A stretch of DNA of 64,000 nucleotides from Hemiscyllium ocellatum (GCF_020745735.1 NC_083409.1:12647259-12711258), one strand, 5' to 3'. Positions 5,961 to 42,136 are shown, counted from the first letter of the stretch. A program made the numbers and translations. Notes: generated from the letters alone by a model not told the origin.

Positions 5961-7043
5961 TCCTGGTCACCACACTCTGGGAAGAATGTGATGGTACCTG
6001 AGAGGGTACAGGGGAGATTTTCCAGGATGCTGCCTGAATGTGAGCTTTGAGCAGTGAAGGCTCAAAAGGGACCTGATAGAGAGGGATAAGATTATTCAGG
6101 ACAGTGATAGGGTGGGTAGGATGGCACATTTTACATCAGTAAAGGACTTCATAATCTGGTACAGAGATTGAAGGTAACACAGACATGGACACGTAGAAAC
6201 TTGGAGCAGCAGTAGGCCATTCGGCCCTTTGATTCTGCTCTGTCATTCAGTATGATCATGGCTGTATCAAGTTTTGAATGTCATCATTTTTTTGAGGGTC
6301 GGTGTGGACTAGTCGGGCCAAATGGCCTGTTTCCACACTGTAGGCATTCTAAGATCTATGTCTGATCCTCTCTCTCAAAGCCATATTCCTGCCTTCTCCC
6401 CATTCTCTTCAAGCTGTTAAAATGCAAAACAATTATCTCTCTCTTTTACTTGAATGTATTCAGTTCCTTGTCCTCCACAGCCTTCAGTGGTAGAGAATTC
6501 CACAGGTTGACCACCCTCTGAGTGAAGAAATGTTTCCTCATCTCAGTCCGAAATGGTCAACCCTGTATCCCCCTGAGCCTGTGTCCCCTGGTTCCAGACT
6601 CCCAACCAGGGGAAACCTCCTCCCTGCCCAGCCCAGTTACAATTTTATATGTTTTAATCAGATCCCCTCTCATCGTTCTGAACACGAGTGACTCCATGGC
6701 CAGGCGAGTTGGAGAGTGGGAGGAGAGTTGAGAAGAAATGTTTTCACCCAGAGGGTGGTGAGAGTCTGAACCTCACTGCCTGAAAGGCTGGTTGAGTCAG
6801 AAACTCTCGTGACAATTGGAGCAGTGTTTAGATATTCCCTTGTGTTGCTGTAGCCTCCAGGGTAATGGGCCAAGAGCTGGAGGATGGGATTAGTGTCATC
6901 AGATCTTTGTTTACCAGCACAGACACAATGGGCCAAATGGCCTCATTCAGTGCTGTTCACATCAATGACTCTGAGACAGAGAGAGTGAGATAGAAAGAGA
7001 GAGAAGAGGAAGTGTGAGGATGTGGCTCTCTCTGCCTGATGCC

Positions 7044-7097
7044 ATTTACATACTGAGGAACACCCAGTCAGACTCTCACAGGCTGCAGCTTTATAAA
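7044..7097 (+). promoter_or_regulatory. Ig VL promoter: octamer-like ATTTACAT (7044-7051) and TATAAA (7092-7097)
   Basis: One mismatch to the Ig octamer ATTTGCAT, 40 nt upstream of a TATA box and ~110 nt upstream of the leader ATG; typical light-chain V promoter layout. Confidence 0.75.
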
Positions 7098-7157
7098 GCA
7101 GAGCCCAGTGAAGGGAGAGTTTATCAGGAACCAGGCACAGGGACAGGAGCACACACC

Positions 7158-7206
7158 ATGATTTCACACATCCAGCTGATCTGGCTCCTGGCATTCTGTG
7201 TCGCAG
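7158..7206 (+). CDS. IGKV: Ig kappa-type light chain exon 1 (leader)
   Basis: ATG at 7158 encodes MISHIQLIWLLAFCVA+G, a hydrophobic signal peptide; phase-1 donor G|GTACAA at 7207; intron 7207-7392 ends in a pyrimidine tract and CAG. Confidence 0.93.
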
Positions 7207-7392
7207 GTACAAATCTCTCTCCTTCCACCTTGAATCTTTCGCTGTTCTCCATTTCACTCCAATTCCACTGACTTGTGATTGATGGGAAAATGCTGAAACC
7301 AGAGGAATGCTCAGTGTCTCCAACAATCTCTCATTTGACCGGCTCTTTCTGTGACAGTTCTGACTTCACTGTGTTTCTCTCTGACCCCTCAG

Positions 7393-7716
7393 GTATCAAT
7401 GGGGACATCATCATGACCCAGTCTCCCCCGGTGCTGTCAGTGGGACTGGGCCAGACCGCAACACTCACCTGTACGGCCAGTCAATATGTTAGCAACTATG
7501 TTAACTGGTACCAGCAGCGAAAAGGTCAGAAACCCTCTCTCCTGATCTACAGTGCAGCAACTCGATACACAGGAGTCTCGGAGCGATTCACCGGCAGTGG
7601 ATCAGGGACCAGTTACACCCTGACAATCAGCAACGTTCAGAATGAAGATGTCGCTGATTATTACTGTCAGCAGTATTACAGCTGGTCGTTCGGTAAAGGA
7701 ACCAAGCTCAGACTGA
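7393..7716 (+). CDS. IGKV: Ig kappa-type light chain exon 2: leader end plus pre-joined V-J
   Basis: (G)[73 protein letters not shown]. All V-set hallmarks (both Cys, Trp, DxAxYYC) run straight into FGxG of J. Canonical phase-1 donor A|GTAAGT at 7717. Confidence 0.97.
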
Positions 7717-8567
7717 GTAAGTAAACCTCAATCCTCTGTTATTAACCCTGTCAATACTGAAACACACTTTCTAAAATACAGTTACTGATTTGTTGAAGGT
7801 GTTAGTGGGGAGCTGCAGTGAATGAAATGGTTGATTGAGGAGCACTGTGTCTAACAGGGTGTCCAGCTGTATTTCTTTACTTTCATGCCCTCTTTAAAAA
7901 AAGCAAGATATAAGTCAGTCAGTTTTACTCACCGTGTGGAGGAGCTCTGTCCATTTGCAGCCTGTGGTCCCATTCCTGCAGCATGGAGTGAAATCAGTGA
8001 GTAGCCTCCTGCCAGTCTCAGTGTGACGGACACGGGCAGAGTTTGATGTGAGCTCTGGTTCCCTGTCCCAGTCTCTGATCTCACTGACCTCAGCAGCAGC
8101 TGCAGCAGCAGCAGCACAGTGAGACACCGAGCTCCCACCTCCCTCAGCTTTAACTCTGCTCAATCACACAATCACAGAATTGTTACAGTGCACAAGGAGG
8201 CCATTCCGTCCATCCTGTCTGGACTAGCTCTCCGAATGAGCAATTCACTGAGTGTCATTCTCCTGCCTTCTCCCTGTCACCCTGCACATTGTTCCTTTTC
8301 AGATAACAGTCTCATTCCCTTCGGAATGTTTCAATTGAAGCTGCCTCCACCACACTCTCAGGCAGTGCATTCCACACCTTAACCACCCACTGGCTGAAAA
8401 TGTTTTCCCTCATCTCACTTTTCTTACTTTTCCAATTACTTTCAATCTGTGGCCTCTCGGTCTCAATCCTTTCACAAGTGGAATCATTTTCTCCCTATTT
8501 ACTCTGTTCCAGGCCCCTCCTGATTTTGAATTTCTGGAACAATTCTCCTCGCTGCCTTCTCCAAAGA

Positions 8568-8769
8568 CTTGAAGGTGCCGGTGTTGGACTGGGGTGGACA
8601 AAGTTAAAAATCACACAACACCAGGTTATAGTCCAACAGGGGGTTTATTTGGAAGCACTAGCTTTCGGAGCGCCCCTCCTTCATCAAATGGTTGTCAGCG
8701 GCGTTCCGAAAGCTAGTGCTTCCACATTAACCTGTTGGACTATAACCTGATGTTGTGTGATCTGTAACT
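8568..8769. mobile_element. Penelope-derived fold-back insertion (second pLTR family; related sequence at 928-1078)
   Basis: Roughly 70-bp inverted arms; TSD TTCTCCAAAGA at 8557-8567 and 8770-8780. Confidence 0.75.
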
Positions 8770-9660
8770 TTCTCCAAAGAAGACAGTCCCAAATTCTCCA
8801 ATGTATCTTCATAACTGATATTCCTCATCCCTGGAATGATCTTTGTGCATATGTTTACCAGCTCTACAAAACATTCACCTCCTTCCTGCATTATTCACAT
8901 TATTTATGTCCCTCATGATTTTATAAACCTCTATAAGGTCACTCCTCAGCCTCCGGCACTTCAGGGTAAAAGGTCTCAGCTTTTCCAGCCTCTAATGGTC
9001 ACGGAGTCACACAGCGTGGAAACAGATCTTTCAGTCTAACTTCTCCATGCTAACTAGATATCCAAAACTGACTTCAACCCATTTGCCAGCATTTAGCCCA
9101 CATCCCTCTAAACCCTTCCTATTCATGTACCCATCCAAACATCTTTTAAATGTTATAATTGTATCCGTCTCCAGCACTTTCTCTGACAGCTCGATCCGTA
9201 CACACACCACCCTCTGTGTGACAAGTTACCCCTCAGGTCCCTTTTGGATCTTTTGCCTCTCATCTTAAACCTATACCCTCTAGTTTTGGATTCCCTTTCC
9301 CAAGGCAAAGACCTGGGATATACACCCTGTCCATGCCCGTCATGATTTTATAAACATCTATAAGGCCACCCCTCAGTCTCCGATCCTGCAGGAAAAATAA
9401 CCCGTCTATTGAGCCTCTTCCGACAGCTCAAACCCTCCAGTTCCAGGCAACATCCATGTAAATCTTTTCTGCAGAATTTTAAGTTTAACAGCATCCTTCC
9501 TATCACAGGATGATCAGAATTGTTCACATTATTCCCAAAGTAGCCTCACCAATTTCCTGTACAGCTGCAAATGATGTCCCAACTCTGATACTTAGTGCAG
9601 TGACCAATAAAGGCAAGTGTACCCAACATCTTCTTCATCTCCCTGTCTCCCTGTGACTTC

Positions 9661-9831
9661 NNNNNNNNNNNNNNNNNNNNNNNNNNNNNNNNNNNNNNNN
9701 NNNNNNNNNNNNNNNNNNNNNNNNNNNNNNNNNNNNNNNNNNNNNNNNNNNNNNNNNNNNNNNNNNNNNNNNNNNNNNNNNNNNNNNNNNNNNNNNNNNN
9801 NNNNNNNNNNNNNNNNNNNNNNNNNNNNNNN
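9661..9831. other. Assembly gap (171 N)
   Basis: Run of n inside a CR1 copy. Confidence 1.
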
Positions 9832-9944
9832 TGTTGAGCAACACCCCACAGGGCCCCACCATTAACAGTATAACTCCTGCCCTGGTTTGATTTTCCAAAA
9901 TGCAACATCTCACATTTATCTAAATTGAACTCCATTTGTCACAC

Positions 9945-10156
9945 GTTTAGATCAGAGCGGTGCTGGAAAAGCACAGCAGGTCAGGCAACATCCGAGGAGC
10001 AGGAAAATCGACGTTTCGGGCAAAAGTCCTTCATCAGGATTCCTCTAGCCGAAACATCAATTTTTCTGCTCCTCGGATGCTGCCTGACATGCTGTGCTTT
10101 TCCAGCACCACTCTGATCTAAACTCTGGTTTCCAGCATCTGCAGTCTGCACTTTTG
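9945..10156. mobile_element. Penelope-derived fold-back insertion in CR1
   Basis: Inverted arms; TSD TCCATTTG(T/C)CACAC at 9931-9944 and 10157-10170. Confidence 0.8.
10006..10041 (-). ncRNA. Minimal hammerhead ribozyme motif in a fold-back insertion
   Basis: AATC-CTGATGA-A-GGAC(TTTT)GCCC-GAAA-C-GTC-GATT: 4-bp stem I, intact core, one mismatch in stem II. Confidence 0.65.
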
Positions 10157-12779
10157 TCCATTTGCCACACCTCTGCCCATTTCCCCAAATGATCAAGGTC
10201 CCACTGTACTCTCAGATAAGCTTCTTCACTATCCACTGTACCACCAATTTTGGTGTCATTTACAAACTCGCCATAATTCCTATATTCACATCCAAATCAT
10301 TTATTTAAATGATGAAAAGCCATGGACCCAGCACCAATCCTTGTGGCACACAGCTGACATCTGATCTCCAGTCTGAAAAGCAACCCCTTACCACCACTCT
10401 CTGTCTCCTATCTTGAAGCCATTTTTTTACCCAAATGGCTAGCTCCCCCTGGATCCCATGTGGCCTAACCTTCCTAATCAGTCTATCATGTGGAACCTTG
10501 TCAAATGCTGAAGTCCATATAGACAGTGTCTACTGTTCTGCCTACCCCAATCTTCTCTTCAAACAACCTCAATCACGTTAGTGAGACATGATTACCATGC
10601 ACAAAACTGCATTGATTGTCCAAATGCATGCAAATCCTGTTCCTCAGAATTCACTCCAATAACTTACCCAGCAATGACATCAGTCCCACTGGTTTATAGT
10701 TCCCTGGCTTTTCCTTAAACAATGGCTAACATTAGCCAACCTCTCTGGTTCTCCAGAACCTCACTCATGGCGGTCAATCAGAAACATACCTCAGCAAGGG
10801 ATCCAGCCATCTCTTTCCTAGCTTTCCACAATGTCCTGGGATACACCTGATCAGGTCCTGGAGATTTATCTACCGTCTTGCACTTTAAGAAATCCTCTTC
10901 TGTAATGTCTTTCTCCATGATAAATACTGACCTGGAATATTCATTTAAGACCTAAACCATTTCCTGTGGATCCACCCAGAGGTACATTGTTCATCTTCAT
11001 GGGGCCCTATTCTCTCTCTAGTTACTCTTTTGCCCTTTTCTTATTTACCATAATTCTACCACTTTTGCCCTTGAGTAAGTTCAGGAATTGTTTGCCCTCC
11101 TTCAAATGTATCTCGAATATACCTGGTCCACATCCTCTACTATTCTTTTCAGGACTTTCCTGCCAACCTTTGATCCCACTTTATTTGGATCCGTTACATC
11201 CATATCCTACAGAAGCTGGCATTTTCCCCAGTGAAGATGTTTGACCCTGAAAAGGCCTTTGTTCTTTTCTACCATCACCTTCAACTTTGTGATACAATGA
11301 TCACTCTTCCTTAAGTGTCCTCTCACAGACACTTGATCCACTTGGGCCTCCTCATTCCCAAGATCCAGATCTAGCAGAGCCTCCTTTCTGGACTGGAAAC
11401 ATGCAGCTGGAGAAAATTCACATGAACACACTCTCACGACCCTGGCCCCTCTCTGTCCTTCACACTGCTACTACCCCAGTCTATATTCAGAAATTAAAGA
11501 CATTCCCCCCCCCCCCCCAACCCCATTTATAATGACTATTACATTTGCAGGTCTCTGTAAATTCCTTGCAAATGTATTCCTCTAAATCTTTCCCACTGGC
11601 TGGTGACTTATTGACTGCACTGATGATTCTGTAGATCTTGGTGCTCCTCTCTGGTATTACTTCCTGACTCCCACAGCCCTGCCAAGTTAGTTTAAACCCT
11701 CTCCAACAGCACGAGTAGATCACCTCAAAGGAGCTCAGTGCCAGCTCTGTTCAGGAGCAACGCTGTCTGGTCTATCCAGGTCCCATCTCCCCCAGACGCA
11801 GTCCCAATGTCACAAGAATCTAAAACCCTCCCTCCTGGATCCTCTTTCCAGCCCCACAGTCACTTGTGTTATCCTCCTGCTCCTCTTGTCACTTGCCTGG
11901 GGCACTGGGAGTAATCTGAAGATTCCTACTTTTGAGTTCCTGATGTTAATTCCCTTCTGAGCTCCCTAAATTCTGACAGCAGGACTACATCCCCTTTCTC
12001 CCTCTGTCACTGGGACCGATGTGGACCACGACTGCTGCCTGTTCCCCCTCTCCCCTCAGGGTGCTCTGCAGTCGCTCAGTGACATCCTTCACCCTGGCAC
12101 CAGGGAGACAACACACCATCCTGGCTTCTCATCTGCAGCTGCAGAAACACCTATCGATGCCCTCACTCTCGAATCTCCTTTCATGATCAGTCTTCCAGTC
12201 TTCCTTATACCCCCCTCCCCCCAATACAGCTGAGCCCCCAGTGGTGCCATGGGTTTGGCTCTGGATGCACTCCCCAGATGAACCATCATTCTCATCAGGA
12301 TTCCAAACTGAATCCTGGTTGGAGAGTGGGATACATTCAGGGGATTCCTGTACTAGCTGCCTGGTCCTTTTGGACTGGCTGCTGCTCCCCCATTCCCTGT
12401 CTCCCTGCATACTCTGAAGCTGCAGAGTGACCACATCTAGAAATGTGCTCTCCACGGAGCTCTCAGCCTCACGGACGCTCCTCACTGACACCAGCTGCTG
12501 CTCAAGCTCCGAAATCCGGAGCTCCAACTGCTGTCACTGACCACACTTCCTGCACTCATGGTATTCCAGGAACTGGGAAGCATTCTGAAATTCCCACATG
12601 GATGCACACTTTCTCCACTCTTTGGTTGTCTCTGGGCAAAGTTCTAATGACAAACAGCTCCAGCAGGGCTCACAGTCCAGTGGGTTCAGTGTTCCAGGAT
12701 TTTGGGAAAACTCTCCAGAAGTCTTTACGAAATAGGAGCAGAAATCAGCCAATCAGCCCATTGAATCTGCTCTGCCATT

Positions 12780-15600
12780 TGATCTTGGCAGATATGCTTC
12801 TCACCCCCATTCTCCTGCCTGCTCCACAGGAACGTTCGATCCCCTTAACAATCACAAACCTATCTATCTCTGTCTTTAATACACTCAGTGACTTGGCCTC
12901 CACTGCCCTCTGTAACAATGAGTTCCACAGATTCACCACCCTCTGGCTGAAGAAAGTCCTCCTCATCTCAGCTCTAAAGGGTCGGCCCTTCATTCTGAGG
13001 CTGCACCTTGGTTACCGAGTCTCTCCTGTTTTTGGAAACATCTTCTCTGCATCCACTCTACGCATGTCTATCAGTATTCTGTAAATTTCAATAAGGTCCC
13101 TCATTCTTCTAAACTCCAGTAAGTACAGACCCAGAGTCCTCAACCACGCCTCATATGACAAGCCTTTCATCCCCAGGATCATTCTTGTAAACCCCTTCAA
13201 TGCCAGCACGTTGTTTCTTAGAATATGGGTCCCAAATCTGCTCACAATATTCCAAATGTGGTTTGACTAGAGCCTTACACAGCCTCAGCAGTACATCTCT
13301 GCTCTTGTATTCTGGCCCTACTGAAATGAATGCGAACATTTCATTTGCCTTCCCAAGCACAAACTGGACCTGCCTGTTAACCTGAAGGGAAACCTGAATG
13401 AGGTTTGTGCTTTAGATTTCCAAAGACTTTCCTCATTTAGAAAACAGTCTTTGCATTTGTTCTTCCTCCCAAAGTGCATACCCTCACACTGTCACACATT
13501 GTATTCTATCTGCCAACTCTTTGCCCACTCTCCGAGCCTATCCAGGAGCTTTTACAGCCTTCCCACTTCCTTAACACTACCTGTCCCTTCACCTACCTCA
13601 TGTCACCTGCAAACTTAGCAACAATGTCTTCACTTCCTTCATCCGGATTGTTAATGTATAACGTGAATAGTTATGGTCCTAACATTGACACCTGCAGAAC
13701 TCTACTCGTCACCAGCGGCCATTGTTCCTCATGCTCTGCTTTATGCCAACCTGCCAGTCCTCAGTCCATGCCAGTACATTGCCCCTAATACTGTGGGCGC
13801 TTATCTTATGTCAAATGCCTTCTGGAAATCCAAAAAGATTACTTCCTCGGACTCTCTTTTGTCTGATTGGTTCATTGCCTCCTCAAAGAATTCTAACAGA
13901 TTTGCCAGGCATGACGTCTCCTTGATGAAGCCATTGCACTTCCAAGTCCTCTGCAATTTCATCCTTAAATTGAAGTCTAAAACCTTACCAACAACTGAGT
14001 CCTGGCTAACTGGCCGATAATGTCCCATCTTCTACCTCCCTCCATTCTTAAACAGGGGTGGTATGTGAGCCATTTTCCTGTCCCTTGCCCCTACCAAATC
14101 CGTCCCCATCTCACCTCCACACCCTGACTCCATTGATTCCTGAAAGATCATCTCCAATACCTCCACAATCTCCTCAGTGATCTCCTTCAGAACACACTGG
14201 TGTAGTTCATCCAGTCTGGGTGAGTTATCCACATTCAGACCTTCCAGCTTCCCCAGTACCTCCTCCTTAGTGATGGCCACTCTCCGAGCCTATCCGGCCC
14301 CTCCGACCCCTGACAGTCTTGAATTACTGGGACACTGCTGGTGTTTTCCATGGTGCAGACTGATGCAAAGTATCTATTCAATTCCTCTGCTATTCCTAAT
14401 TTTCCTGTTATTCTTTCTCCAGCCTCATTTTCCAGTGATCCATAGTCTATTTTTGACTCCCTCTTCCTTTTTATACACCTGATAAAACTCCTGCAATCTT
14501 CTTTTATATGACTGGCTAGATAACTCCCACATTTCACATTCTCCACCCTTAATGCTTTTTCAGTTATCCCCTGCAGGTTTTTAAAGGCTTCCTAATCCTC
14601 CGGCTTCCCACTATTCTCCACCATATTGTATGCCTTTTCTTTTGCTTCTATGCTGTCCTTGACCTCCCCCATCAGCCATGGTTGCCTTGTCCTCCCCTTG
14701 GTATGTTTCTTCTTTTTTGGGATGAGTTCCTGATCTGCTTCCTGAATTACGCCCAGAAACTCTGCTGTTTGCTGCCCCACCATCTTACCTGCTCGGCTCC
14801 CCTTCCAACCAACTCTGGCCAGCTCCTTCCTCATGTCTTTGGAGTTACCTTTACTCAACTGAAATACTGTTCAATCTGATTGCAGCTTCTCCCTCTCAAA
14901 CTACAGGGGGAATTCTATCATATTATTGTCACTTATCCACAGGGATACTTTCATCTTAACCTCACTCATCATGTTTGCCTCAATACACATCACTGAATCC
15001 AGACCTGCCTGTTCCATCATGGCTCAACCACAAGCTGCTCCAAAATCCATCTCGTCGACATTCCATGAAACCTTTCCTTGAGATACACTACCCAGCCCAC
15101 CGATCCATTGAAGTCTGCCCTGACATTTTCTGTCTCCTGACTGATTTCCTTCCCCACACCCTGATTACTGCTTGGAGATCTGGACATAACTTGCATCAGA
15201 TTCTTTATTTATTGCAGTTCCTCAGCTCTACCCACTCACATTCTACACCTTCTAACTCTACATCACTTCTTGCTATTGATTTAATTTCATTTCTCACTAA
15301 CAAGGCAACTCTTCCCCCTCTGCCCATCTGCCTGTCCTTTTGATAGGACATGTAACCTTGGATATTTAGTTCCCAGCCCGAATTCCCTTACAGCCATGTC
15401 CCTGTGATACCCACAACATCGTACCTGCCAGTTTCAATCTGCACTACCAGCCCATTGTGTATATTGTGTGCATTTAAGTACAACACCCTCAGTCCTGCAT
15501 TGACTGCCCTCATTCCCATCATTGTCCCCTTATCTGCTGTGCTTTATGTTCGATTCCTGATCCTTTCTGTCCTTTTACATCTTCTAGAAACTTGAATAAC
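12780..15600 (-). mobile_element. CR1 LINE ORF2 remnant
   Basis: YRPVS..VVGKVL, CLANLLEFFEE..VIFLDFQKAFD, LVKPHLEYCEQIW; many stops. Confidence 0.9.
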
Positions 15601-16099
15601 CTTTCCTGAGCCCTCCTCCACTTTAACTAGCTTAAATTCCTTAGAAACTCAATTTACCTCAATGTGTGGCATCACTATTACTCCCTTACTCGGAATGCTT
15701 TGTGCATTTAGATACAACCTCTTTAAGTTTGTACTATTATTGATTTTCCCTGCACTTTCATGGTTCCTTTGATGTTCAAAACTTCCATCCCTTTTATTTT
15801 TTGGTAACAATCAATCCCATCACTAACCAGCAATCCTACCTTCTCCTTTACCTTCCATTTTCTCATTTTCCATCCAACTGAACCAAATTCCTTTCTCTTT
15901 GGGTTGAGTTCAGGACAATATTTATCGTTGAGCCAACATCATTATTGCTTTTTGATCTCATTGCTTCTAGTGGGATCTTGCTGTGCAGAAACTGGCTGCC
16001 ACGTTACTGACATTGCAACAGTGACTGCTTGTCAACCAAAAATGCCTGAAAATGTCTTTGGGAGAGCCTGAAGTGTTAAGGGCTGGATTGAAATACAAT

Positions 16100-16780
16100 T
16101 AGAGTCAGAGGAATGGACAGCACAGAATCAGACCCTTCGGTCCAACTCGTTCATGCTGACCAAATATCCAAAATTAATCTAGTCCCATTTGCCAGCATTT
16201 GGCCCATATCCCTCTAAACTCTTCCTATTAATATACCCATGCCTTTTAAATGTTGTAATTGTCCCAGCCTTCACCACCTCCTCTGGCAGCTCATTCCATA
16301 CATTTAACACCCTCTGAATGAAAACGTTGTCCCTTAGGTCCCTTTTAAATCTTTCCCCTGTCACCGTCAGCCTATGCCCTCCAGTTCTGGACTCCCCTGC
16401 TCTGGAGAAAAGATCTTCTCTATTCACCCTATCTATGCCGCTCATGATTTTATAAACCTCTATACGGTCACCCATCAACCTGCAATGATCCAGGGAAAAC
16501 AGCCTCAGCCTATTCAGCCTCTCCCTTTTGCTCAAATCCTCCGACCTTGGCAACATCTTTGTAAATCTTTTCTGAACCATTTTAAGGTTCACAACATTTT
16601 TCCTGTAGCAGGGAGACCAGAATTGCACACAGTATTCCAAAAGTGCCCTAACCAATGTCCTGTACAGCCGCAACAGCTCCCAACTCCAATAATCATTGCA
16701 CTGACCAATAAAGGAAAGCAAACCAAATGACTTTGTCACTCCCCTACCTACCTGCAACTTCATCTTCAAGGAACTATTCT
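16100..16780 (-). mobile_element. CR1 LINE 3' fragment
   Basis: LYRTLVRALLEYCVQFWSP..VQKRFTKM..ERLNRLRLFSL..WNELPEEVV. Confidence 0.9.
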
Positions 16781-16829
16781 TCATTTTTTGGATGAACTGA
16801 GAGTCTTTCAGTTGTGAAAGATGCCATTC

Positions 16830-17030
16830 CATGGCACTATTGGATGAAGAGCAGGCAGTTCCCCCTGGTGTCCCTGGTCAATATTTATCCCCCAGTCAAA
16901 ATCACTCAGAATGTATCTCTCTGCTAATTATCACATGGTGTTTGGGATCTCGCTGTGCACAGTCTGCTAGAAAGATCCAGTGGGACATCCTGAGCTGGGG
17001 GCAGGTGCTACACAAATGCAAGTCTTTCTT
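16830..17030 (+). mobile_element. DeuSINE/SacSINE1-like fragment
   Basis: GTGTCCCTGGTCAATATTTATCCC..ATTATCACAT..GGGATCTCGCTGTGC..AAATGCAAGTCTTTCTT resembles the Deu domain and tail as I recall them; related pieces at ~15950-16060 and ~23300-23420. Confidence 0.5.
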
Positions 17031-17844
17031 TAAGGGTTGGAGTCTCCTGATCCGGATCCTCATCCATTGTCTGCGCACTCTCACCTTCCGGGGTCATGAG
17101 GTCATTAGGAGCAGTGACCCTATCTGACCCTAGGACACTGAGACTATTCGCAGCCTCACCCTTGACCTCAGCCCAGCAGTGTGCAGCAAGGTTTGAAATA
17201 TAATCTAGAACCTTCTACACAGACACCCAACGTGACTCTTTCCCGAAGTGTGTGGATCCGAGTCTGCGCCAATGTTCTCGGACAAAGTTCTCCTGATCTG
17301 TGGGTGATCGGAGGTTTGTTAAAGAGATATTGAGCTCCATCCCACTTTCCAGCTCTTGCTCCATAGCTCTGGAGGTTTCGCTGTTTCAAGTGAATATCTA
17401 AGTGTTTTTTCAATGTGATGAGGGTTTCTGCCTCTCCCACCCTTTCAGACAGTGAGTCCCACATCCCACCAACCTCTGGGTGAAAACAAATACCCTCAAC
17501 TCCCCTCTAATCCTGCCCCCAACTGATTTCAATCTCTCCCCAGGGTTATTGCCCTCTGTGCTGGTGGAAATCAGTCCTTCCTACCCACTCTGTCCAAGCC
17601 CCTCATTATTTACACACCACCATCAAATCTCCCCTCAGCCTCCTGCGATCCAAAGAAAACAGTCCCAGCCAATCCAATCATTCCGCAAAGCTCAAAGCCC
17701 CCATTCCAGATAAACTACTCCTCTGTCCTGTAATGTGGTGACCAGAACCATACACTGTTCCCTCACTGTGCTCTAACTGGGGTTTTATACAGTTCCAGAA
17801 TAAACAAACTTCTTGCTTTCACAGTCAACCAAAAATGAGATAAG

Positions 17845-18175
17845 GGAGGTGATGGTCTAATGGTGTTATTGCTGAGCTGTTAATCCAGAGATCCAGGTAA
17901 TGTTCTGGGGACCAGGGTTAGAATCCAGCAGATGGTGGCATTCAAATTCAATCAAGAAAATCTGCAATTAAGAGTCTAATGATGACCATGAAACAATTGT
18001 TGATTGTCAGGAAAAAGCATCTGATTCCCTAATGTCCTTTAGGGAAGGAAACTACCATCCTTACCATGTGACCCCAGACCCACAGCAATGTGGGTGACTC
18101 TAAACTGCCCTTTGGGTGATTAGGGATGGGCAATAAATGCTGCCGATCCAGCAATGCCCTCATTCCATCAAGGGA
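17845..18175 (+). mobile_element. tRNA-head SINE sharing its tail with the 2.3-4.4 kb LINE family
   Basis: A/B-box-like head (TGGTCTAATGG..GGGTTAGAATCC) and GGGATGGGCAATAAATGCTG tail repeated elsewhere (e.g. ~19118). Confidence 0.55.
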
Positions 18176-19311
18176 AAAAGAAAAACAGTTTATCCCATGT
18201 GTCTTCTGAACCACCTCACTGACCTGCATTCATTAGTCACCATGGCCACATCTTCCAGCTCCACACCCATCTGACTTCCAGCTTCAAACTGACGAGAGAC
18301 ATTCCTTCATTATCTGAGAAACAGATCGAAAAATCAAACACAGGAGCAGCAGTAGGCCATTCGGCCCTTCAGGCCTGCTCCACCATTCAGTATGATCATG
18401 GCTGATCATCCAACACAGTCCCCTGTTATGCTTTCTCCCCACATTCTTTGATCCCTTTAATCCTAAGAACTATATCTAATTCCTTCTTTAATACACATTG
18501 CATCTAATTCCCTTTTGCTGGAAAAATGGATGACAATTATTGGGTTGTTGTCTGTTGACCAGTATGGACGCAATTGGCTGATGAGCCTTTTCGGTCTCTA
18601 TGAATCTTTGACCCTATTATTATATATTATGAATAACTGGGTACCAAGGACTGACCCCTGTGACACCCTAAGTTGTAATTACCTGCCATTCAGAAAAAGA
18701 CTCCTTCTTTCTGTGCTGTCGGCCAACCAGTACCCAATCCATGTCAGGACATGGCCCCAATCCTCTTGTTCATTTGGTCTAGATCTGGAAGTCCCACCTT
18801 TACTCTTTGTAGGAACAGATTCTGAATGATCTCTGACTCGTCCATCGAGGGCTCCCACTGCCTTGACACTGATTTCCCATCATGTCACTGCTTCCAGTCC
18901 ACTTTTACCAAAGCACCACACAGTTTAGTTAAATGAAAACTTTTACACTTACTGCACTTCCATCCATAGTCTCAATCTCACTGAGTTTTGAGCACTGTCG
19001 CTGAAATGCTCCCCCAGTGATAACCCTTCCAGTTGCTCACAGTCATTCCATAAACAATGGTCTAAAACTGTCCCTTTTTCTCAGCTGCTTCACCATCACC
19101 TTCTCAGGGGCAATTAGGGATGGGCAATAAATGCTGGCCCTGCCAGTGACCCTCACATTCCCAAGAAGCAATTTGAACAATGCCTGTTCATTTGTCAGGT
19201 TTATTCTGTATTGACCAAAAATGTTCAAAAAGATTGTATTGCCAGTGAATATTGTGAAGGTTGAATTCCCTTCGAATGACAGGGATTAAAATTGCTCCTC
19301 TTATCTTTCAG

Positions 19312-19640
19312 GCCGTGACAACTCTCAGCCCAAGCTGACCCTGCTGCCTCCCTCCCTGGAGCAGGTCAATGCCAAGGGCACTGCCACCCTGGTGTGCCTT
19401 GCCAATCACTTCTATCCCGATGAGCTGGAGGTGCAGTGGAAGAAGGACGGTGCAGTCATTTCGGACGGGGTTCAGACCAGCAACTACCTGCGAGCTTCGG
19501 ACAGCACCTACAGTGTCAGCAGCCTGCTGACCCTCTCTGGGTCTGACTGGGAGTCCAACGCTCGCTTCTCCTGTGCCCTCACCCACGTGACCCTCCCCTC
19601 TCCCCTCAGCAAGAGCATCAGGAGATCAGAATGTGTGTAG
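19312..19640 (+). CDS. IGKC: Ig kappa-type light chain constant exon (shark NS4/type III-like)
   Basis: Acceptor TTATCTTTCAG ends at 19311; the phase-1 join A|GC gives S-RDNSQPKLTLLPPSLEQVNAKGTATLVCLANHFYPDELEVQWKKDG..YSVSSLLTLSGSDWESNARFSCALTHVTLPSPLSKSIRRSECV*. C1-set Cys/Trp and penultimate inter-chain Cys present; in frame with the V-J exon. Confidence 0.97.
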
Positions 19641-20170
19641 AGTGTTGGAGACAGTCCACAGAGGAGGCACAACTTTAAATAGAACAGGGCTGAGCTGGCA
19701 GGACAAAGGTCATTGTCAGCACTGAATTTCAACTCTCTTCCTTCTCAGGACTGGCTCAGAGAACCTTCTGAGGTTTGGATGTTAAAGCAGGTCATTGTGA
19801 CAGTGTCAAGAGAGCTTTACGCTGTGTCAAACTCCATGCTGTACCTTGTCCTGGGAGTGTTTGATGGGGACATGGTTGACTTGTGATGCCAAGTAAAATC
19901 TCTTGAAGTTGCTGAAGACTGTCAGCTGTACAAAACAATGTGGACCTCAGAATTCTCTGCTTCAGTAAACCAGATCTCCTTCCTGCTTAGCTGTCAGTTC
20001 CAATTTAAGGTTTGGTCACTGTTTAAAGGGACAGGATTATCGTGTTATTGAGAAAATCTCCACAAGTGTTTTTCTCAAGCTCCAATGTGGCTGTGAATTT
20101 GTGCAGCTTCCTCTGTCTGGGCTGTTAATTGCAGTTGTTTTTTTTCTGTCAATGTAAATCTGGAAAAGGG

Positions 20171-20176
20171 AATAAA
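20171..20176 (+). other. Candidate polyadenylation signal of the kappa transcript
   Basis: AATAAA ~530 nt after the stop codon; the same hexamer is kept in the inverted paralogous 3' UTR (TTTATT 30876-30881). Confidence 0.6.
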
Positions 20177-20651
20177 GGTGAAGATTCAGTCTCTGTCTGG
20201 TGAATGCTTTGGAAATAGATGACCTCCCCCCACCTCAGTTGATTGGCTGCATTTCAGCAGGTCATTGTCAAGATTGGCTGGTTGGCCTGTCAATCAATTA
20301 CAATCATCAATCATTAATCATTCCAAAAATAACAGAAACTGAAAGCTGTTAGGACTCAATAAGTACAATCTGATGCATTCCCTCTTCACTTTGTTGGTCC
20401 AGGCCCAGCTGATGGGATCGTACTGTGCAATCTCTGCTACATGTTGGTAAGCTGCTGAAACAATCTCCTGCCATTCACCAACATTGTCGGCCTTATGTGT
20501 CTCTCTGAGCGTGATTGTTTAATTTAATGTTGCCTGTAGGTCTCTGAGTGTGGGTGTGTTACTCAGTGAGACACCCACAGACAGCACTGAGCAACAACAC
20601 CCACATTCGGAGACTCCTGCAGGGAGCATGGAGTGTGAGCAGTGCTGCTCT

Positions 20652-20786
20652 CTCTCTCAGTGTGAGTGTGTTACTTAGTGCAGCCTGTAGGTGTCTCTCT
20701 CAGTGTGAGTGTGTTACTTAGTGCTGCCTGTAGGTGTCTCTCTCAGTGTGAGTGTGTTACTCTGTGCTGCCTGTAGGTGTCTCTCT
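20652..20786. repeat. 43-bp minisatellite, about 3 copies
   Basis: Unit CTCTCTCAGTGTGAGTGTGTTACTTAGTGC(A/T)GCCTGTAGGTGT at 20652, 20695 and 20738; degenerate copy near 20530. Confidence 0.95.
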
Positions 20787-20879
20787 GAGGTCTGTGTCTC
20801 CGAGCGATAGATTGAGAATGGGCTTTGTGCTGGGGATTGAAGATTAGGCTTTAATCTTCTCAAATCATGAATGAAAAAC

Positions 20880-22060
20880 AGTTCAGGCTTGTGCCCGAAA
20901 CATCGAATTTCCTGTTCCTTGGATGCTGCCTGACCTGCTGCGCTTTAACCAGCCACACATTTACTACAAAGTCACAGATTCCCATATCTAACTGGACCAC
21001 ACCTCCTCCCATTCAGTATCCTGCAAGAACTCCATCCCATTCTTCCAATTCCTCTGCCTCCGCCCCATCTGCTCAGATGAGGAGACCTTCCACTGACCAT
21101 AGATGTCCACCTATTACGAACAACGTGCTTTTCCTCCTTCTGTCATCCAACGCACTCCTCCCTTTCCCACTCCACTGCTCTAAATCCAGCCCCCTCCAAA
21201 CACAATTAAAACAGAGTCCCCATTGTCCTCACCTATGAGCCCACCAATCTCCGTATCCAAAACATCATCCTTAAACACTTCTGCTAACTCCAACTAGACC
21301 ACACCACCAAATACATCTTCCTCTCCCCACCACTGAATGCCTTCCATAAGGACCATTCTCTTTGACAATTCTTGGTTTGCGTCACTCTCCCACCTACCCT
21401 CCCGAATCCCAGGTACCTTCCCTGCTACTCAAAACGATGCAAAGCCTGCTGGTACTCTAATCCCTCACCTCCATCCAGGGCCCCAAGCAGTCCTCCAGGT
21501 GAGACAGAGATTCACCTGCCTCTCCTCCAACCTAATTCACTGCACCAGGTGCTCCCGATGTAGTCTTCTCTACATCGGGAAGACCAAACATAAACTTAGG
21601 GAATGGTTCACCGAGCATCTTAGCTGGGACCGGAGGGGCTGACTTGACTCCCAGTCACTATCTATTTTAATTCCCCTTCCCACTCCCTTTCTGAAATGAC
21701 CATCCTTGGCCTCCTCCATTGGCACAACAAACCAAACTGCAAATTGGAGGAACAACACCCCATATTACGCCTGGGCGGCTGACAGCCCAGAGGACTCAAC
21801 ATTGAGTTCTTCAATTTCATATAACCACCCTTCCCACTCCCCTGTCTCCCTTCCAAATCTCTCTCCCTCCCTTCCACTCCTTCCTGCCAGCTACCGCATT
21901 CATTCCTCCCATTGACCAACCAGGTCATAACCTCTACCTGTCATCACCAATCCCCACTTCATCATCCTGTTCCTGCCACCCCCTTTATCTTAGCTCTCCC
22001 TACACCCCCCCCCCCCGCCCCCCATTCTTGAAAAAGAGTTACACACCGAAATGTCAACTA
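20880..22060 (+). mobile_element. Penelope-like element fragment (GIY-YIG)
   Basis: LIHCTRCSRCSLLYIGKTKHKLREWFTEHL with pLTR-type ends. Confidence 0.8.
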
Positions 22061-30832: not shown

Positions 30833-31630
30833 ATTTCCAAAGCACACACGAGACAGAGACTGAATCTTCTTCATCTTTATTCACTTTTCCAGATTGACAT
30901 TGACAGAAAACAGTCAGCAATTATCAGCCCAGACAGAGGAAGCTGCACAAATTCACAGCCACAATGGAGCTTGAGGAAAACACTTGTGGAGATTTTCTCA
31001 ATAACCTGAGAATCCTGTCCCTTTAAACAGTGACTAAACCTTAAACTGGAACTGGTGGCTGAGCAGGAAGGAGATCTGGTTTACTGAAGCAGAGACTTCT
31101 GAGGTTCACATTGTTTTTACACAGCGGACAGTTTTCAATATCTTTGAAAGGTTATGCTTGTTATTACAACTCAACACTGTCCCCAACAAACAGTCTCCTG
31201 GACAGGGACAGAATAGGGTTAGATACAGAGTAAAGCTCTTTCCGTACTGTTCCCACCAAAGACACCCAGGACAGGGACACGATAAGAAACAGAATAAAGC
31301 TGTCTCCACACTGTCCTCGTCAAACACTCCCAGGACAGGGACAGCACTGGTTGGGAACAGAGTGAATCTCTCTCTATAGTGTCACGATAACCTGCCTTAA
31401 CCCATGAACCTCAGAGTCTCCCAGAGGCCAGTCTCAAGAAGGAAGAGAGTTGAAATTCAGTGCTGACAATGACCTTTGTCCTGCCAGCTCAGCCCTGTTC
31501 TATTTAAAGTTGTGTCTCCTCTGTGGACTGTCTCCAACACTCTACACACATTCTGATCTCCTGATGCTCTTGCTGAGTGGGGAGGGGAGCGTCACGTGGG
31601 TGAGGGCACAGGAGAAGTGAGCATTGGACT
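30833..31630 (-). pseudogene. IGKC: Inverted 5'-truncated kappa C fragment plus 3' UTR
   Basis: Reverse complement aligns to ~19552-20215. Coding remnant 31630-31542 reads SNAHFSCALTHVTLPSPLSKSIRRSECV*; homology stops abruptly at 31630. Confidence 0.93.
31175..31378. repeat. Three copies of a ~64-70 bp repeat in the paralogous kappa 3' UTR
   Basis: Units at 31175, ~31245 and 31309 (CACTGTCCCC..AAACACTCCCAGGACAGG.ACAG..GAGTAAAGCTC); a single copy at ~19803-19872. Confidence 0.85.
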
Positions 31631-38549: not shown

Positions 38550-39956
38550 CTGAAAATGTGTTGCTGGAAAAGCGCAGCAGGTCAGGCAGCATTCAAGGAG
38601 CAGGAGAATCGCTGTTTCGGGCAAGAGCCCTACTTCGGGAATGAGGAAAGTGTGTCCAGCAGGCTAAGATAAAAGGTAAGGAGGGACTTTGGGGAGGGGC
38701 GTTTGGAAACGCAATAGGTGGAAGGAGGTTAAGGTGAGGGTGATAGGCCAGAGTAGGGGTGAGGGCGGAGAAGTCAGGAAGAAGATTGCAGGATAGGAAG
38801 GCGGTACTGAGTTCGAGGGTTGGGACTGAGACAAGGTGGGGGGAGGGGAAATGAGGAAACTGGAGAAGGAGGCCATCTGGATTGAACGGTATTCCTTCTT
38901 CAAAGACCGCAATTTCCTGCCAGACGTGATCGACGATGTTCTCCACTGGATGTCCTCCACTTCCCGCTCCTCCGGGCTTGAGCCCCGCCCCTCCAATCAC
39001 ACAGGACAGAACCCCACTGGTCCTCACCTACCAACCCACCAACCTCCGTATACAGCGTATCATCTGCCGTCATTTCCGCCACCTCCAAATGGACCCCACT
39101 ACCAGGGATACATTTCCCTCCCCTCCTCTCCCCTTCAGCATTCCAAAAAGACCACTCCCTCCGTGACTCCCTCGTCAGGTCCACACCCCCCACCAACCCA
39201 ACCGCCACTCCCGGCACCTTCCCCTGCAACCGCAAGAAATGCAAAACTTGCACCAACACCTCCCCCCTTACTTCCCTCCAAGGCCCCAAGGGATCCTTCC
39301 ATATCCTCCACAAATTCACCTGCACCTCCACACACATCATTTACTGTATCCGCTGCACCCGATGAGGCCTCCTCTATATTGGGGAGACAGGCCACCTACT
39401 TGCGGAACGTTTCAGAGAACACCTCTGGGACACCCAGACCAACCAACCCAACCACCCCGTGGCTCAACACTTCAACTCCCCCTCCCACTCCACCAAGGAC
39501 ATCTAGGTCCTTGGACTCCTCCATCGCCAGACCATAGCAACACGACGGCTGGAGGAAGAGTACCTCATCCTCTGCCTAGGAACCCTCCAACCACAAGGGA
39601 TGAACTCAGATTTCTCCAGTTTCCTCATTTCCCCTGCCCCCACTTTGTCTCAGACCCAACCCTCGAACTCAGCACCACCTTCCTAACCTGCAATCTTCTT
39701 CCTGACCTCTCTGCCCCCACCCCTACTCTGGCCTATCACCCTCACCTTAACCTCCTTCCACCTATCGCGTTTCCAATGCCCCTCCCCCAAGTCCCTCCTC
39801 CCTACCTTTTATCTTAGCCTGCTTGGCACACTTTCCTCATTCCTGAAGAAGGGCTTATGCCTGAAATGTCGATTCTCCTGCTCCGTGGATGCTGCCTGAC
39901 CTGCTGCGCTTTTCCAGCAACACATTCTCCAGCATCTGCAGTCCTCACTTTCTCCT
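38550..39956 (+). mobile_element. Penelope-like element (second family) with inverted pLTR, inserted in CR1 ORF1
   Basis: GTFPCNRKKCKTC..FTCTSTHIIYCIRCTR*GLLYIGETG..ERFREH (GIY-YIG); 38560-38875 inverted pLTR; TSD CCAGGTGCCA(A/G)GG at 38537 and 39957. Confidence 0.88.
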
Positions 39957-41581: not shown

Positions 41582-42136
41582 CGCAAAAGTGATTAGATTA
41601 GACTTACAGTGTGGAAACAGGCCCTTCGGCCCAACAAGTCCACACCGACCCGCCGAAGCGCAACTCACCCATACCCCTACATTACCCCTTACCTAACACT
41701 ATGGGCAATTTAGCATGGCCAATTCACCTGACCCGCACATCTTTGTGACTGTGGGAGGAAACCGGAGCACCCGGAGGAAACCCACGCAGACACGGGGAGA
41801 ACGTGCAAACTCCACACAGTCAGTCGCCTGAGTCGGGAATTGAACGCGGGTCTACAGGCGCTGTGAGGCAGCAGTGCTAACCACTGTGCCACCGTGCCGC
41901 CCTATGCGCCCTATGCCGCCCGTGAGGAGTGCAGATGCTGGAAACCAGTGTTTAGATCAGAGTGGTACTGGAAAAGCACAGCAGGTCAGGCAGCATCCGA
42001 GGAGCAGGAAAATCGATGTTTCGGGCAAAAGCCCTTCATCAGGAATAGATGAAGGGCTTTTGCCCGAAACGGCATTTTCCTTGCTCCTCGATGCAGCCTG
42101 ACCTGCTGTGCCTTCCAGGACCACTCTGACCTAAAC
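41582..42136. mobile_element. Composite insertion: HE1 SINE (-) plus Penelope fold-back
   Basis: SINE ~41591-41903 and hairpin ~41927-42136, together flanked by TAGGGTAGGAATA at 41569-41581 and 42137-42149. Confidence 0.8.

What the first reader, a model, noticed from the sequence alone, without database searches (positions are those of the whole stretch)
7158..19640. Intact, apparently germline-joined V-J kappa light-chain gene
Seen: V runs in frame into J ([14 protein letters not shown]) with no heptamer, nonamer or intervening DNA; leader, splice sites, C exon and polyA signal are intact. Known: cartilaginous fish have multicluster Ig loci, and some light-chain clusters, including nurse shark NS4 kappa, are pre-joined in the germline, attributed to RAG activity in germ cells. 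Inference: an inherited, ready-made antibody light chain.
Basis: partly seen in the sequence, partly recalled or inferred. Interest (0 to 1): 0.75.

Follow-up and report, generated by a model that had tools for sequence, protein, structure and literature searches.

The report
Germline-joined shark kappa light-chain gene
This is an intact shark antibody light-chain gene whose V and J pieces are already fused in the assembled genome; such genes were described in nurse sharks in 2000, so it is a clean new example of a known oddity and not a new kind of thing.

Summary
A 233-codon kappa (type III/NS4-like) light-chain gene runs from the ATG at 7158 to the stop at 19638-19640. It has a leader exon, a 186-nt leader intron, one fused V-J exon, an 11.6-kb transposon-filled J-C intron and one C exon, with canonical splice sites.

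Two split paralogues from Chiloscyllium punctatum contigs align to the window up to 7683 and again from 7687. What the window lacks is exactly their interval of V 12-spacer signal, 502 or 681 bp, and J 23-spacer signal. The joint looks like an ordinary RAG coding joint: 4-5 nt lost from V, 5-6 from J, no added bases needed, in frame, with a short 7-residue CDR3.

The N gap (9661-9831) lies inside one LINE fragment in the J-C intron. Its flanks are collinear in three other copies of that element and in a positionally matching paralogue, so it touches no coding sequence. Its true length is probably about 40 nt.

Inheritance of the joint is strongly inferred but was not shown by reads: the public contigs were too short to bridge it. 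Expression of this particular gene is untested.

The kind is known (Lee et al. 2000, nurse shark NS4). The scan has already noted at least eight other joined kappa genes in this genome.

The parts
7044..7051 (+). Octamer-like promoter motif ATTTACAT, one mismatch from ATTTGCAT
   Evidence: The motif and the surrounding 140 nt upstream of the ATG are almost identical in split paralogues L001 and L002 and in joined L003.
7091..7098 (+). TATA-like box TTTATAAA
   Evidence: It is conserved in L001, L002 and L003.
7158..7206 (+). Leader exon (MISHIQLIWLLAFCVA + 1 nt). It carries Leu where every aligned kappa chain with a true leader has Pro; the difference is T7186.
   Evidence: In one search, C at 7186 is the majority letter in runs X3, X9 and X16.
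7207..7392 (+). Leader intron, 186 nt, GT..AG
   Evidence: RNA-type contigs of run X16 skip 186 nt here with GT..AG ends (table 5); these are transcripts of the gene family.
7393..7716 (+). Fused V-J exon. V-derived sequence runs to 7686/7687 and J-derived sequence from 7687/7688. The last J base is A, in phase 1.
   Evidence: The Pfam V-set match has E 7e-19.
7684..7688 (+). The V-J coding joint. There are 21 nt between the Cys and Phe codons, against 31 nt (24 V + 7 J) untrimmed in the split paralogues.
   Evidence: L001 and L002 align up to 7683 and again from 7687. Protein read-throughs of six split V genes each show 8 codons after Cys before the heptamer.
7717..19311 (+). J-C intron, 11,595 nt, filled with LINE fragments and palindromic short elements
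   Evidence: It is partly collinear with the J-C introns of L001, L002 and L003.
9661..9831 (.). Assembly gap inside a minus-strand LINE fragment within the J-C intron. It is not in coding sequence.
   Evidence: The flanks are collinear in three other copies of the element and in L002. The implied true length is about 40 nt.
19312..19640 (+). Kappa constant exon (S-RDNSQPK...SECV) with stop TAG at 19638-19640
   Evidence: The Pfam C1-set match has E 7e-22. It differs at two residues each from the C. punctatum kappa C regions P0004 and P0005.
19641..20176 (+). 3' UTR up to the AATAAA at 20171-20176
   Evidence: Homology with L003 ends at 20176, and homology with the inverted fragment at 30833-31630 ends at 20216.

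Best explanation
This is a germline-joined immunoglobulin kappa (type III/NS4-type) light-chain minicluster of an orectolobiform, bamboo-shark-like genome.

Origin (inferred from the anatomy): an ancestral split cluster had the layout V, 12-spacer signal, about 0.5-0.7 kb, 23-spacer signal, J. It underwent ordinary RAG-type V-to-J recombination in a germ-line cell. The signal-flanked interval was deleted. The coding ends lost 4-5 nt (V) and 5-6 nt (J) and were ligated without added bases. The result is an in-frame joint with a fixed 7-residue CDR3 (QQYYSWS).

Function (inferred, not shown): the gene keeps the family's octamer-like and TATA motifs, both intron splice sites, the C exon and a polyA signal. 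It should therefore be transcribed and spliced like its split sisters and yield a 233-residue kappa precursor without needing RAG. By analogy with the nurse shark joined NS4 genes, this would happen mainly early in life. Somatic hypermutation would be the only remaining source of diversity.
For: Family and structure:
- V-set and C1-set domains are present, and the spliced reading frame is intact at 233 codons.
- The best protein hits are shark 'immunoglobulin kappa light chain' entries. C. punctatum scores 81-84% in V, and a nurse shark light-chain V-C entry and Heterodontus kappa score 75-77%.

The excised interval:
- The split paralogues L001 and L002 carry V|CACAGTG-12-nonamer, then 502 or 681 bp in all between the V and J coding ends (both signals included), then nonamer-23-CACTGTG|J. 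The nonamers are ACAAAAACC (L001) and the variant ATTAAAAAC (L002) at V, and GGTTTTTGT (L001) and GATTTTTGT (L002) at J.
- The window is 90-93% identical to them on both sides (L002's downstream match is about 87%) and lacks exactly that interval.
- Homology with L001 runs 1.1 kb upstream of the ATG, so this is not a retrocopy.

Signs of a working gene:
- The promoter motifs match those of the split genes.
- Framework dN/dS is 0.2-0.3 and CDR dN/dS is about 1 against the paralogues.
- Family transcripts in run X16 use the same leader splice and the same J donor, joined to a C exon that starts like this one.

Support for inheritance:
- Another joined kappa gene sits on a 1.65-Mb C. punctatum contig (L003).
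- The scan has noted at least eight other joined kappa genes in this same genome, some out of frame and decayed (unchecked notes).
- Lee et al. 2000 (PMC2193156) describe the same class. It has little sign of TdT activity, deletion at the J flank, the same octamer as split genes, and J ending in A.
Against: - No read or contig was shown to bridge the joint in an independent individual or a non-lymphoid tissue. The Logan contigs were 60-270 nt and none of the listed records spans 7683/7687.
- No transcript or database protein carries this exact V-J. The best identity in V was 84%, and an exact look-up found nothing.
- No ortholog with the same joint was found in C. punctatum proteins, so the join could not be dated.
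- The V tree is unresolved, with no well-supported branch.
- The leader has Leu at a position that is Pro in every aligned kappa chain with a true leader. The CDR3 is unusually short. Either could matter for function.
Confidence: 0.88

Rival explanations
1. The joint is a somatic V-J rearrangement from a lymphocyte that was captured in the assembly. On this reading the inherited locus is split.
For: The read-level test was inconclusive. The tissue used for the assembly is unknown to me. The joint looks like any lymphocyte coding joint.
Against: - In a polyclonal tissue each B-cell clone's joint would be carried by a tiny fraction of reads, too few to become the consensus of a contig (inference).
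- The scan noted at least eight other joined kappa genes in the same genome, including out-of-frame, decayed ones.
- An independent C. punctatum assembly has a joined kappa gene (L003). Its annotation also predicts three kappa chains with no signal read-through (P0003-P0005).
- The joint has no N addition. Lee et al. reported this for germline joints, in contrast to somatic joints.
Confidence: 0.05
2. The gene is germline-joined but is a silent relic. On this reading it is inherited and intact by chance, is not used, and awaits decay like the out-of-frame joined copies elsewhere in the genome.
For: - No transcript specific to this gene was found.
- Lee et al. detected no significant joined NS4 message in adult nurse shark.
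- The leader has a Pro-to-Leu change, and the CDR3 is short at 7 residues.
- Other joined kappa copies in this genome are noted as dead.
Against: - The reading frame, canonical Cys/Trp/Cys and FGXG residues, both splice pairs, promoter motifs and polyA signal are all intact.
- Framework dN/dS of 0.2-0.3 against paralogues fits constraint. This is a pairwise value and cannot be assigned to one lineage.
- Nurse shark pups do express the joined NS4 genes R4 and R18.
Confidence: 0.3
3. The gene is an ancestral V-J exon that was never split, a survivor from before the RAG transposon entered the V gene.
For: There are no signals and no intervening DNA.
Against: - The gene sits inside the modern kappa family. 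It is about 90% identical at nucleotide level to split clusters, including introns and 1.1 kb of upstream flank.
- The homology breaks fall within 4-6 nt of where the paralogues' heptamers sit. That is the footprint of excision with end trimming.
- Lee et al. reached the same direction, split to joined, by phylogeny.
Confidence: 0.01
4. The linkage is a scaffolding error at the N gap. On this reading the V-J exon and the C exon belong to different clusters.
For: A gap of estimated length lies between them. The genome holds many similar kappa clusters.
Against: - Both gap flanks are adjacent parts of one LINE fragment, in the same orientation.
- They are collinear in three other copies of the element (47232-46723 and 36637-36157 in the window, and 9602-10111 in L001).
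- They are also collinear in the positionally matching intron of the contiguous contig L002 (12764 matches 9648; 12819 matches 9834).
- Every comparison implies about 40 missing bases.
- Long J-C introns are normal in this lineage. L001 has more than 7.4 kb, and the C. punctatum gene models span 9.1-11.7 kb.
Confidence: 0.04

Closest known systems
Nurse shark (Ginglymostoma cirratum) germline-joined NS4/kappa genes R4, R7, R18, RE18, R6, R19 (Lee, Fitch, Flajnik, Hsu 2000, J Exp Med; PMC2193156)
   Same: - Same isotype (kappa/type III) and same minicluster layout of leader, V-J and C.
- V-J is fused with no signals.
- The joint shows end deletion and no clear N region.
- The octamer and other regulatory motifs match those of the split sisters.
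- J ends in A before the donor.
- Joined and split genes are mixed within one family.
   Different: - The species is different; the nearest sequences are from Chiloscyllium.
- The joint sequence and CDR3 differ, at 7 residues here.
- The J-C intron is much longer (11.6 kb) and full of transposons.
- Population spread and expression in pups were shown for the nurse shark genes and not for this one.
Chiloscyllium punctatum joined kappa gene on BEZZ01000502.1 (protein chiPu_0011747 = P0026; locus L003)
   Same: - Leader, fused V-J exon and C exon with no signals.
- It aligns continuously with the window across the joint (7001-8532, 78%).
- The AATAAA sits at the same offset after the stop.
   Different: It is a divergent paralogue with an 11-residue CDR3 (MQDYSVPQTLS) and a 4.4-kb gene span. 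It is either an independent join or a very old split from this gene.
Split kappa clusters of C. punctatum (BEZZ01006054.1 = L001; BEZZ01005289.1 = L002)
   Same: They are 87-93% identical in the promoter, leader, leader intron, V, J and the start of the J-C intron. L002 carries the same LINE fragment at the same intron position.
   Different: They keep the V 12-spacer signal, 502 or 681 bp between the coding ends, and the J 23-spacer signal. L002 appears dead: Cys23 is replaced by Tyr and the J donor is altered.
Fully joined light-chain families (type II/lambda in all cartilaginous fish studied; type I/sigma-2 in skates) and the nurse shark joined sigma-2 gene that pairs with IgM1gj in neonates
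   Same: These are inherited, pre-assembled light-chain V regions expressed without rearrangement (review PMC5192425).
   Different: They are different isotypes. In those families every member is joined, whereas here joined and split genes coexist.

Membership tests
Cartilaginous-fish Ig kappa (type III / NS4) light-chain minicluster | V-set domain with canonical Cys23, Trp35 and Cys88 and a kappa-like framework | tested here: met
   Pfam V-set E 7e-19. The invariant columns C26, W38 and C91 are shared with 17 shark kappa chains.
Cartilaginous-fish Ig kappa (type III / NS4) light-chain minicluster | A single C1-set constant exon downstream on the same strand, closest to shark kappa C | tested here: met
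   Pfam C1-set E 7e-22. The exon differs at two residues each from the C regions of P0004 and P0005, annotated 'kappa light chain-like'. The J donor and C acceptor are both in phase 1.
Cartilaginous-fish Ig kappa (type III / NS4) light-chain minicluster | Kappa-type signal arrangement in the family: 12-spacer at V and 23-spacer at J | tested here: met
   This was seen in the split paralogues L001 and L002, not in the window itself.
Germline-joined Ig gene (sensu Lee et al. 2000) | V and J contiguous and lacking exactly the signal-bounded interval of split relatives | tested here: met
   Homology with L001 and L002 stops at 7683 and resumes at 7687. The missing interval is 502 or 681 bp, signals included. 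There is no nonamer in 6000-21000.
Germline-joined Ig gene (sensu Lee et al. 2000) | The joint is present in germline or non-lymphoid DNA and shared between individuals | tested here: inconclusive
   Contigs of four public runs were laid on 6950-8050, and no listed record bridges the joint. Run X1 holds the gene-specific stretch 7487-7610 at 124/124. The remaining support is indirect: the consensus assembly, other joined genes and the literature.
Germline-joined Ig gene (sensu Lee et al. 2000) | Not a retrocopy: introns and the upstream promoter are retained | tested here: met
   The leader intron and J-C intron are present. Homology with a split cluster runs 1.1 kb upstream of the ATG.
Functional (expressed) joined light chain | A transcript or protein carrying this exact joint | tested here: inconclusive
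   RNA-type runs hold only 10-31% of the V-J exon's words, which is conserved family sequence. Run X16 shows family transcripts using the same splice sites. No database protein exceeds 84% identity in V, and an exact look-up was blank.

The most novel reading that the evidence does not exclude
This lineage may carry far more germline-joined kappa clusters than the roughly 10% reported for nurse shark. The scan has notes on at least eight, spread over about 9 Mb of this chromosome. The in-frame ones, such as this gene with its fixed, unusually short CDR3, could together form a RAG-independent, innate-like light-chain set. Such a set might be used in embryos and neonates, paired with germline-joined heavy chains.
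Probability: 0.2. Interest if true: 0.5.

Novelty: new member of a known kind. Interest (0 to 1): 0.25.

Why it matters
Germline-joined antibody genes show that the V(D)J recombinase has acted in germ cells. They give an animal fixed, inherited antibody chains. This locus is a clean, intact example with its split sister genes available for comparison, so the excision footprint can be read base by base.

It adds a data point for a genome-wide census of joined versus split kappa clusters in bamboo-type sharks. I found no such census in the paper library. It does not change what is known.

Tried and rejected
Reads:
- Read laying on 6950-8050 with runs X1, X3, X9 and X16 returned only short unitigs, because the gene family is multi-copy. 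No listed record bridges the joint, so the key germline test stayed open.
- RNA holders carry only conserved family words.

Fetching related DNA:
- The look-up of encoding contigs for the C. punctatum chromosome-scale models P0003 and P0004 gave no DNA because the file is too large. The apparently joined state of P0003-P0005 therefore rests on their protein sequences alone.
- One look-up failed on queueing and was repeated.
- An exact look-up of the window's V-J open reading frame in public assemblies found nothing.

Other analyses that led nowhere:
- An ML tree of 27 shark kappa V regions (88 columns) had no well-supported branch. It cannot place the window's V or date the join. Rows P0067, P0111 and P0028 were left out for lacking the trimming motifs.
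- Rfam found nothing in the window.
- Pfam on the ten longest ORFs found only a reverse transcriptase.
- A findings search for split kappa clusters returned nothing, which means nothing.

Readings rejected: an ancestral gene that was never split, a retrocopy, and a scaffold mis-join. The reasons are under the rival explanations.
Full report
**What is there**

The window holds one immunoglobulin light-chain gene on the + strand.
- The leader exon is 7158-7206 (MISHIQLIWLLAFCVA plus one base).
- A 186-nt GT..AG intron follows at 7207-7392.
- A single V-J exon at 7393-7716 ends ...[19 protein letters not shown], followed by one A and the donor GTAAGT.
- An 11,595-nt intron runs from 7717 to 19311.
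- The constant exon is 19312-19640, after the acceptor CTTATCTTTCAG, and ends ...RRSECV-TAG.
- Spliced together this gives 702 nt, or 233 codons with one terminal stop.

Pfam calls the two domains V-set (E 7e-19) and C1-set (E 7e-22). The degenerate pattern for YYCQQYY occurs once, against zero expected. A six-frame motif scan and tblastn find no second V or J in the 64 kb. The finding's coordinates are exactly ATG to stop.

**The gap, tested first**

The Ns at 9661-9831 lie 1.9 kb inside the J-C intron, so no reading frame crosses them. Both flanks belong to one minus-strand LINE fragment.

I compared coordinates only. No gap letters were looked up or filled.
- The left and right flanks align to adjacent, same-orientation parts of three other copies of the element. 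These are window 47232-46876/46811-46723, window 36637-36398/36259-36157, and L001 9602-9960/10010-10111.
- The contiguous C. punctatum contig L002 carries the same element at the same position in its own J-C intron. It runs collinear across the place: L002 12764 matches window 9648, and L002 12819 matches window 9834.
- Every comparison implies about 40 missing bases, not 171.

The V-J exon and the C exon are therefore most likely truly linked. A long J-C intron is normal in this lineage. L001 still has no C exon 7.4 kb after its J, and C. punctatum kappa gene models span 9.1-11.7 kb.

**What family it belongs to**

A protein search returned shark kappa chains as the closest relatives.
- Chiloscyllium punctatum 'immunoglobulin kappa light chain-like' entries are 81-84% identical in V.
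- Cetorhinus, Hemiscyllium, Scyliorhinus, Heterodontus kappa and a nurse shark light-chain V-C entry (P0008) score 73-80%.
- Two C. punctatum models (P0003, P0004) begin with 39 residues identical to the open frame in the window's leader intron. The genome is therefore a close relative of bamboo sharks. I did not determine the species.

No database protein is this gene (best 84% in V).

**The footprint of the join**

Two split C. punctatum paralogues could be fetched as DNA.

| Locus | V end, heptamer-spacer-nonamer | Between V and J coding ends | Nonamer-spacer-heptamer, J start |
|---|---|---|---|
| L001 (BEZZ01006054.1) | ...TACCCTCGA, CACAGTG-12-ACAAAAACC | 502 bp | GGTTTTTGT-23-CACTGTG, GCTTCCGTTCGGT... 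|
| L002 (BEZZ01005289.1) | ...AGCTGGTCTTGG, CACAGTG-12-ATTAAAAAC | 681 bp | GATTTTTGT-23-CACTGTG, GGACACGTTCGGT... |

A 12-spacer at V and a 23-spacer at J is the kappa arrangement (established knowledge).

The window aligns with L001 from 1.1 kb upstream of the ATG to 7683 (91%) and again from 7687 (93%). It aligns likewise with L002 (90% and 87%). What is missing is exactly the signal-bounded interval.

All six split V genes whose models read through the heptamer have 8 codons (24 nt) after the Cys. The split J segments have 7 nt before the Phe codon.
- An untrimmed joint would therefore have 31 nt between Cys and Phe and would be out of frame.
- The window has 21 nt (CAGCAGTATTACAGCTGGTCG).
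- Read against L002, V lost 4-5 nt and J lost 5-6 nt, with one ambiguous C and no base that needs N or P addition.

This is an ordinary RAG-type coding joint. Lee et al. report the same pattern for nurse shark joined NS4 genes: deletion at the J flank and little sign of TdT.

Retention of both introns and of the upstream flank rules out a retrocopy. The close nesting among split genes rules out a gene that was never split.

**Is it in working order?**

- The 140 nt before the ATG, including ATTTACAT (7044) and TTTATAAA (7091), are nearly identical to those of the split genes.
- The only AATAAA after the stop is at 20171 (+530). The joined paralogue L003 has one at +527.
- Homology of both L003 and an inverted C-exon fragment elsewhere in the window ends within 45 nt of that signal.
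- Framework dN/dS against L001 and L003 is 0.20-0.29, and CDR1+2 is about 1. This is the usual pattern of working V genes, though a pairwise value cannot be assigned to one lineage.

Two oddities remain. The leader has Leu where every aligned kappa chain with a true leader has Pro (T7186; the majority letter in runs X3, X9 and X16 is C). The CDR3 is short, at 7 residues.

**Reads**

Runs of 'organism A' hold 55-72% of the words of the stretch. Other organisms hold 41-45% of the 1.1-kb stretch, and RNA-type runs 10-35%. I laid X1 and X3 (organism A, two studies), X9 (organism B) and X16 (RNA-type) on 6950-8050.

The contigs are unitigs of 60-270 nt, broken at every branch of this multi-copy family. 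None of the listed records bridges 7683/7687, so the decisive test is inconclusive.

What the lay does show:
- X1 carries the gene-specific stretch from CDR1 to the start of FR3, 7487-7610, at 124/124.
- Split paralogues with heptamers appear as loose ends at 7676 (X1) and 7667 (X9).
- In X16, family transcripts skip the leader intron (186 nt, GT..AG). They run from 7716 into CCGTGAGAACTCTCAGCCCAAG..., the start of a kappa C exon. This confirms both predicted splice sites for the family, not for this gene.

**Why I still read the joint as inherited**

- A particular lymphocyte's joint would be carried by far too few reads to become the consensus of a contig (inference).
- A joined kappa gene also sits on a 1.65-Mb contig of an independent C. 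punctatum assembly (L003).
- Three more C. punctatum models (P0003-P0005) show V running into J with no signal read-through, unlike P0009, P0016, P0017 and P0021.
- The scan's own notes list at least eight other joined kappa genes in this genome, several out of frame and decayed. I did not check these notes.
- The class is documented. About 10% of roughly 50 nurse shark NS4 genes are germline-joined, from at least five independent events. Four of six are in frame, they are widespread in the population, and they are expressed in pups but barely in adults (PMC2193156; review PMC5192425).

**Verdict**

It is a new member of a known kind.

An ML tree of V regions was unresolved, and no ortholog with the same joint was found, so the join is undated. 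Interest is low to moderate. The value of this locus lies in a clean excision footprint and in a possible genome-wide census of joined kappa genes. I found no such census for bamboo sharks in the paper library.

Noticed in passing
window 30833-31630 (minus strand): An inverted, truncated copy of the last third of a kappa C exon (...SNAHFSCALTHVTLPSPLSKSIRRSECV*) plus its 3' UTR. It is 85-88% identical to 19552-20216 and breaks off at about 31630. It looks like a remnant of another cluster about 11 kb downstream in the opposite orientation.
   Followed up: partly
window 9661-9831: The assembly gap is written as 171 N. Collinearity of its flanks in four related copies implies only about 40 missing bases.
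   Followed up: yes
window 7186: The leader has CTC (Leu) where every aligned shark kappa chain with a true leader, and the majority of contigs in runs X3, X9 and X16, have CCC (Pro). The effect on signal-peptide function is unknown.
   Followed up: partly
window ~8575-8765 and ~9945-10135; further copies near 2626-2756, 20916-20946, 38562-38601, 39880-39919, 41950-42136: Short palindromic (MITE-like) elements are scattered through the window and also occur in the C. punctatum loci. Rfam matches nothing here.
   Followed up: no
L002:10001-11270 (C. punctatum BEZZ01005289.1): This split kappa cluster looks dead. The first canonical Cys of V is Tyr (TLTYKSS), the V nonamer is degenerate (ATTAAAAAC), and the J donor reads GAGGAAGT instead of GAGTAAGT.
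   Followed up: no
window 42314-42826 (+), 12745-14858 (-), 16179-16832 (-): LINE reverse-transcriptase fragments (Pfam RVT_1, E 3.5e-13, at 42314-42826). Apart from the kappa gene, no other cellular gene stood out among the window's ten longest ORFs, only transposon debris.
   Followed up: partly
window 8093-8116: A short (GCA)n microsatellite followed by an isolated CACAGTG at 8115 in the J-C intron. No nonamer accompanies it, so it is not a recombination signal.
   Followed up: partly
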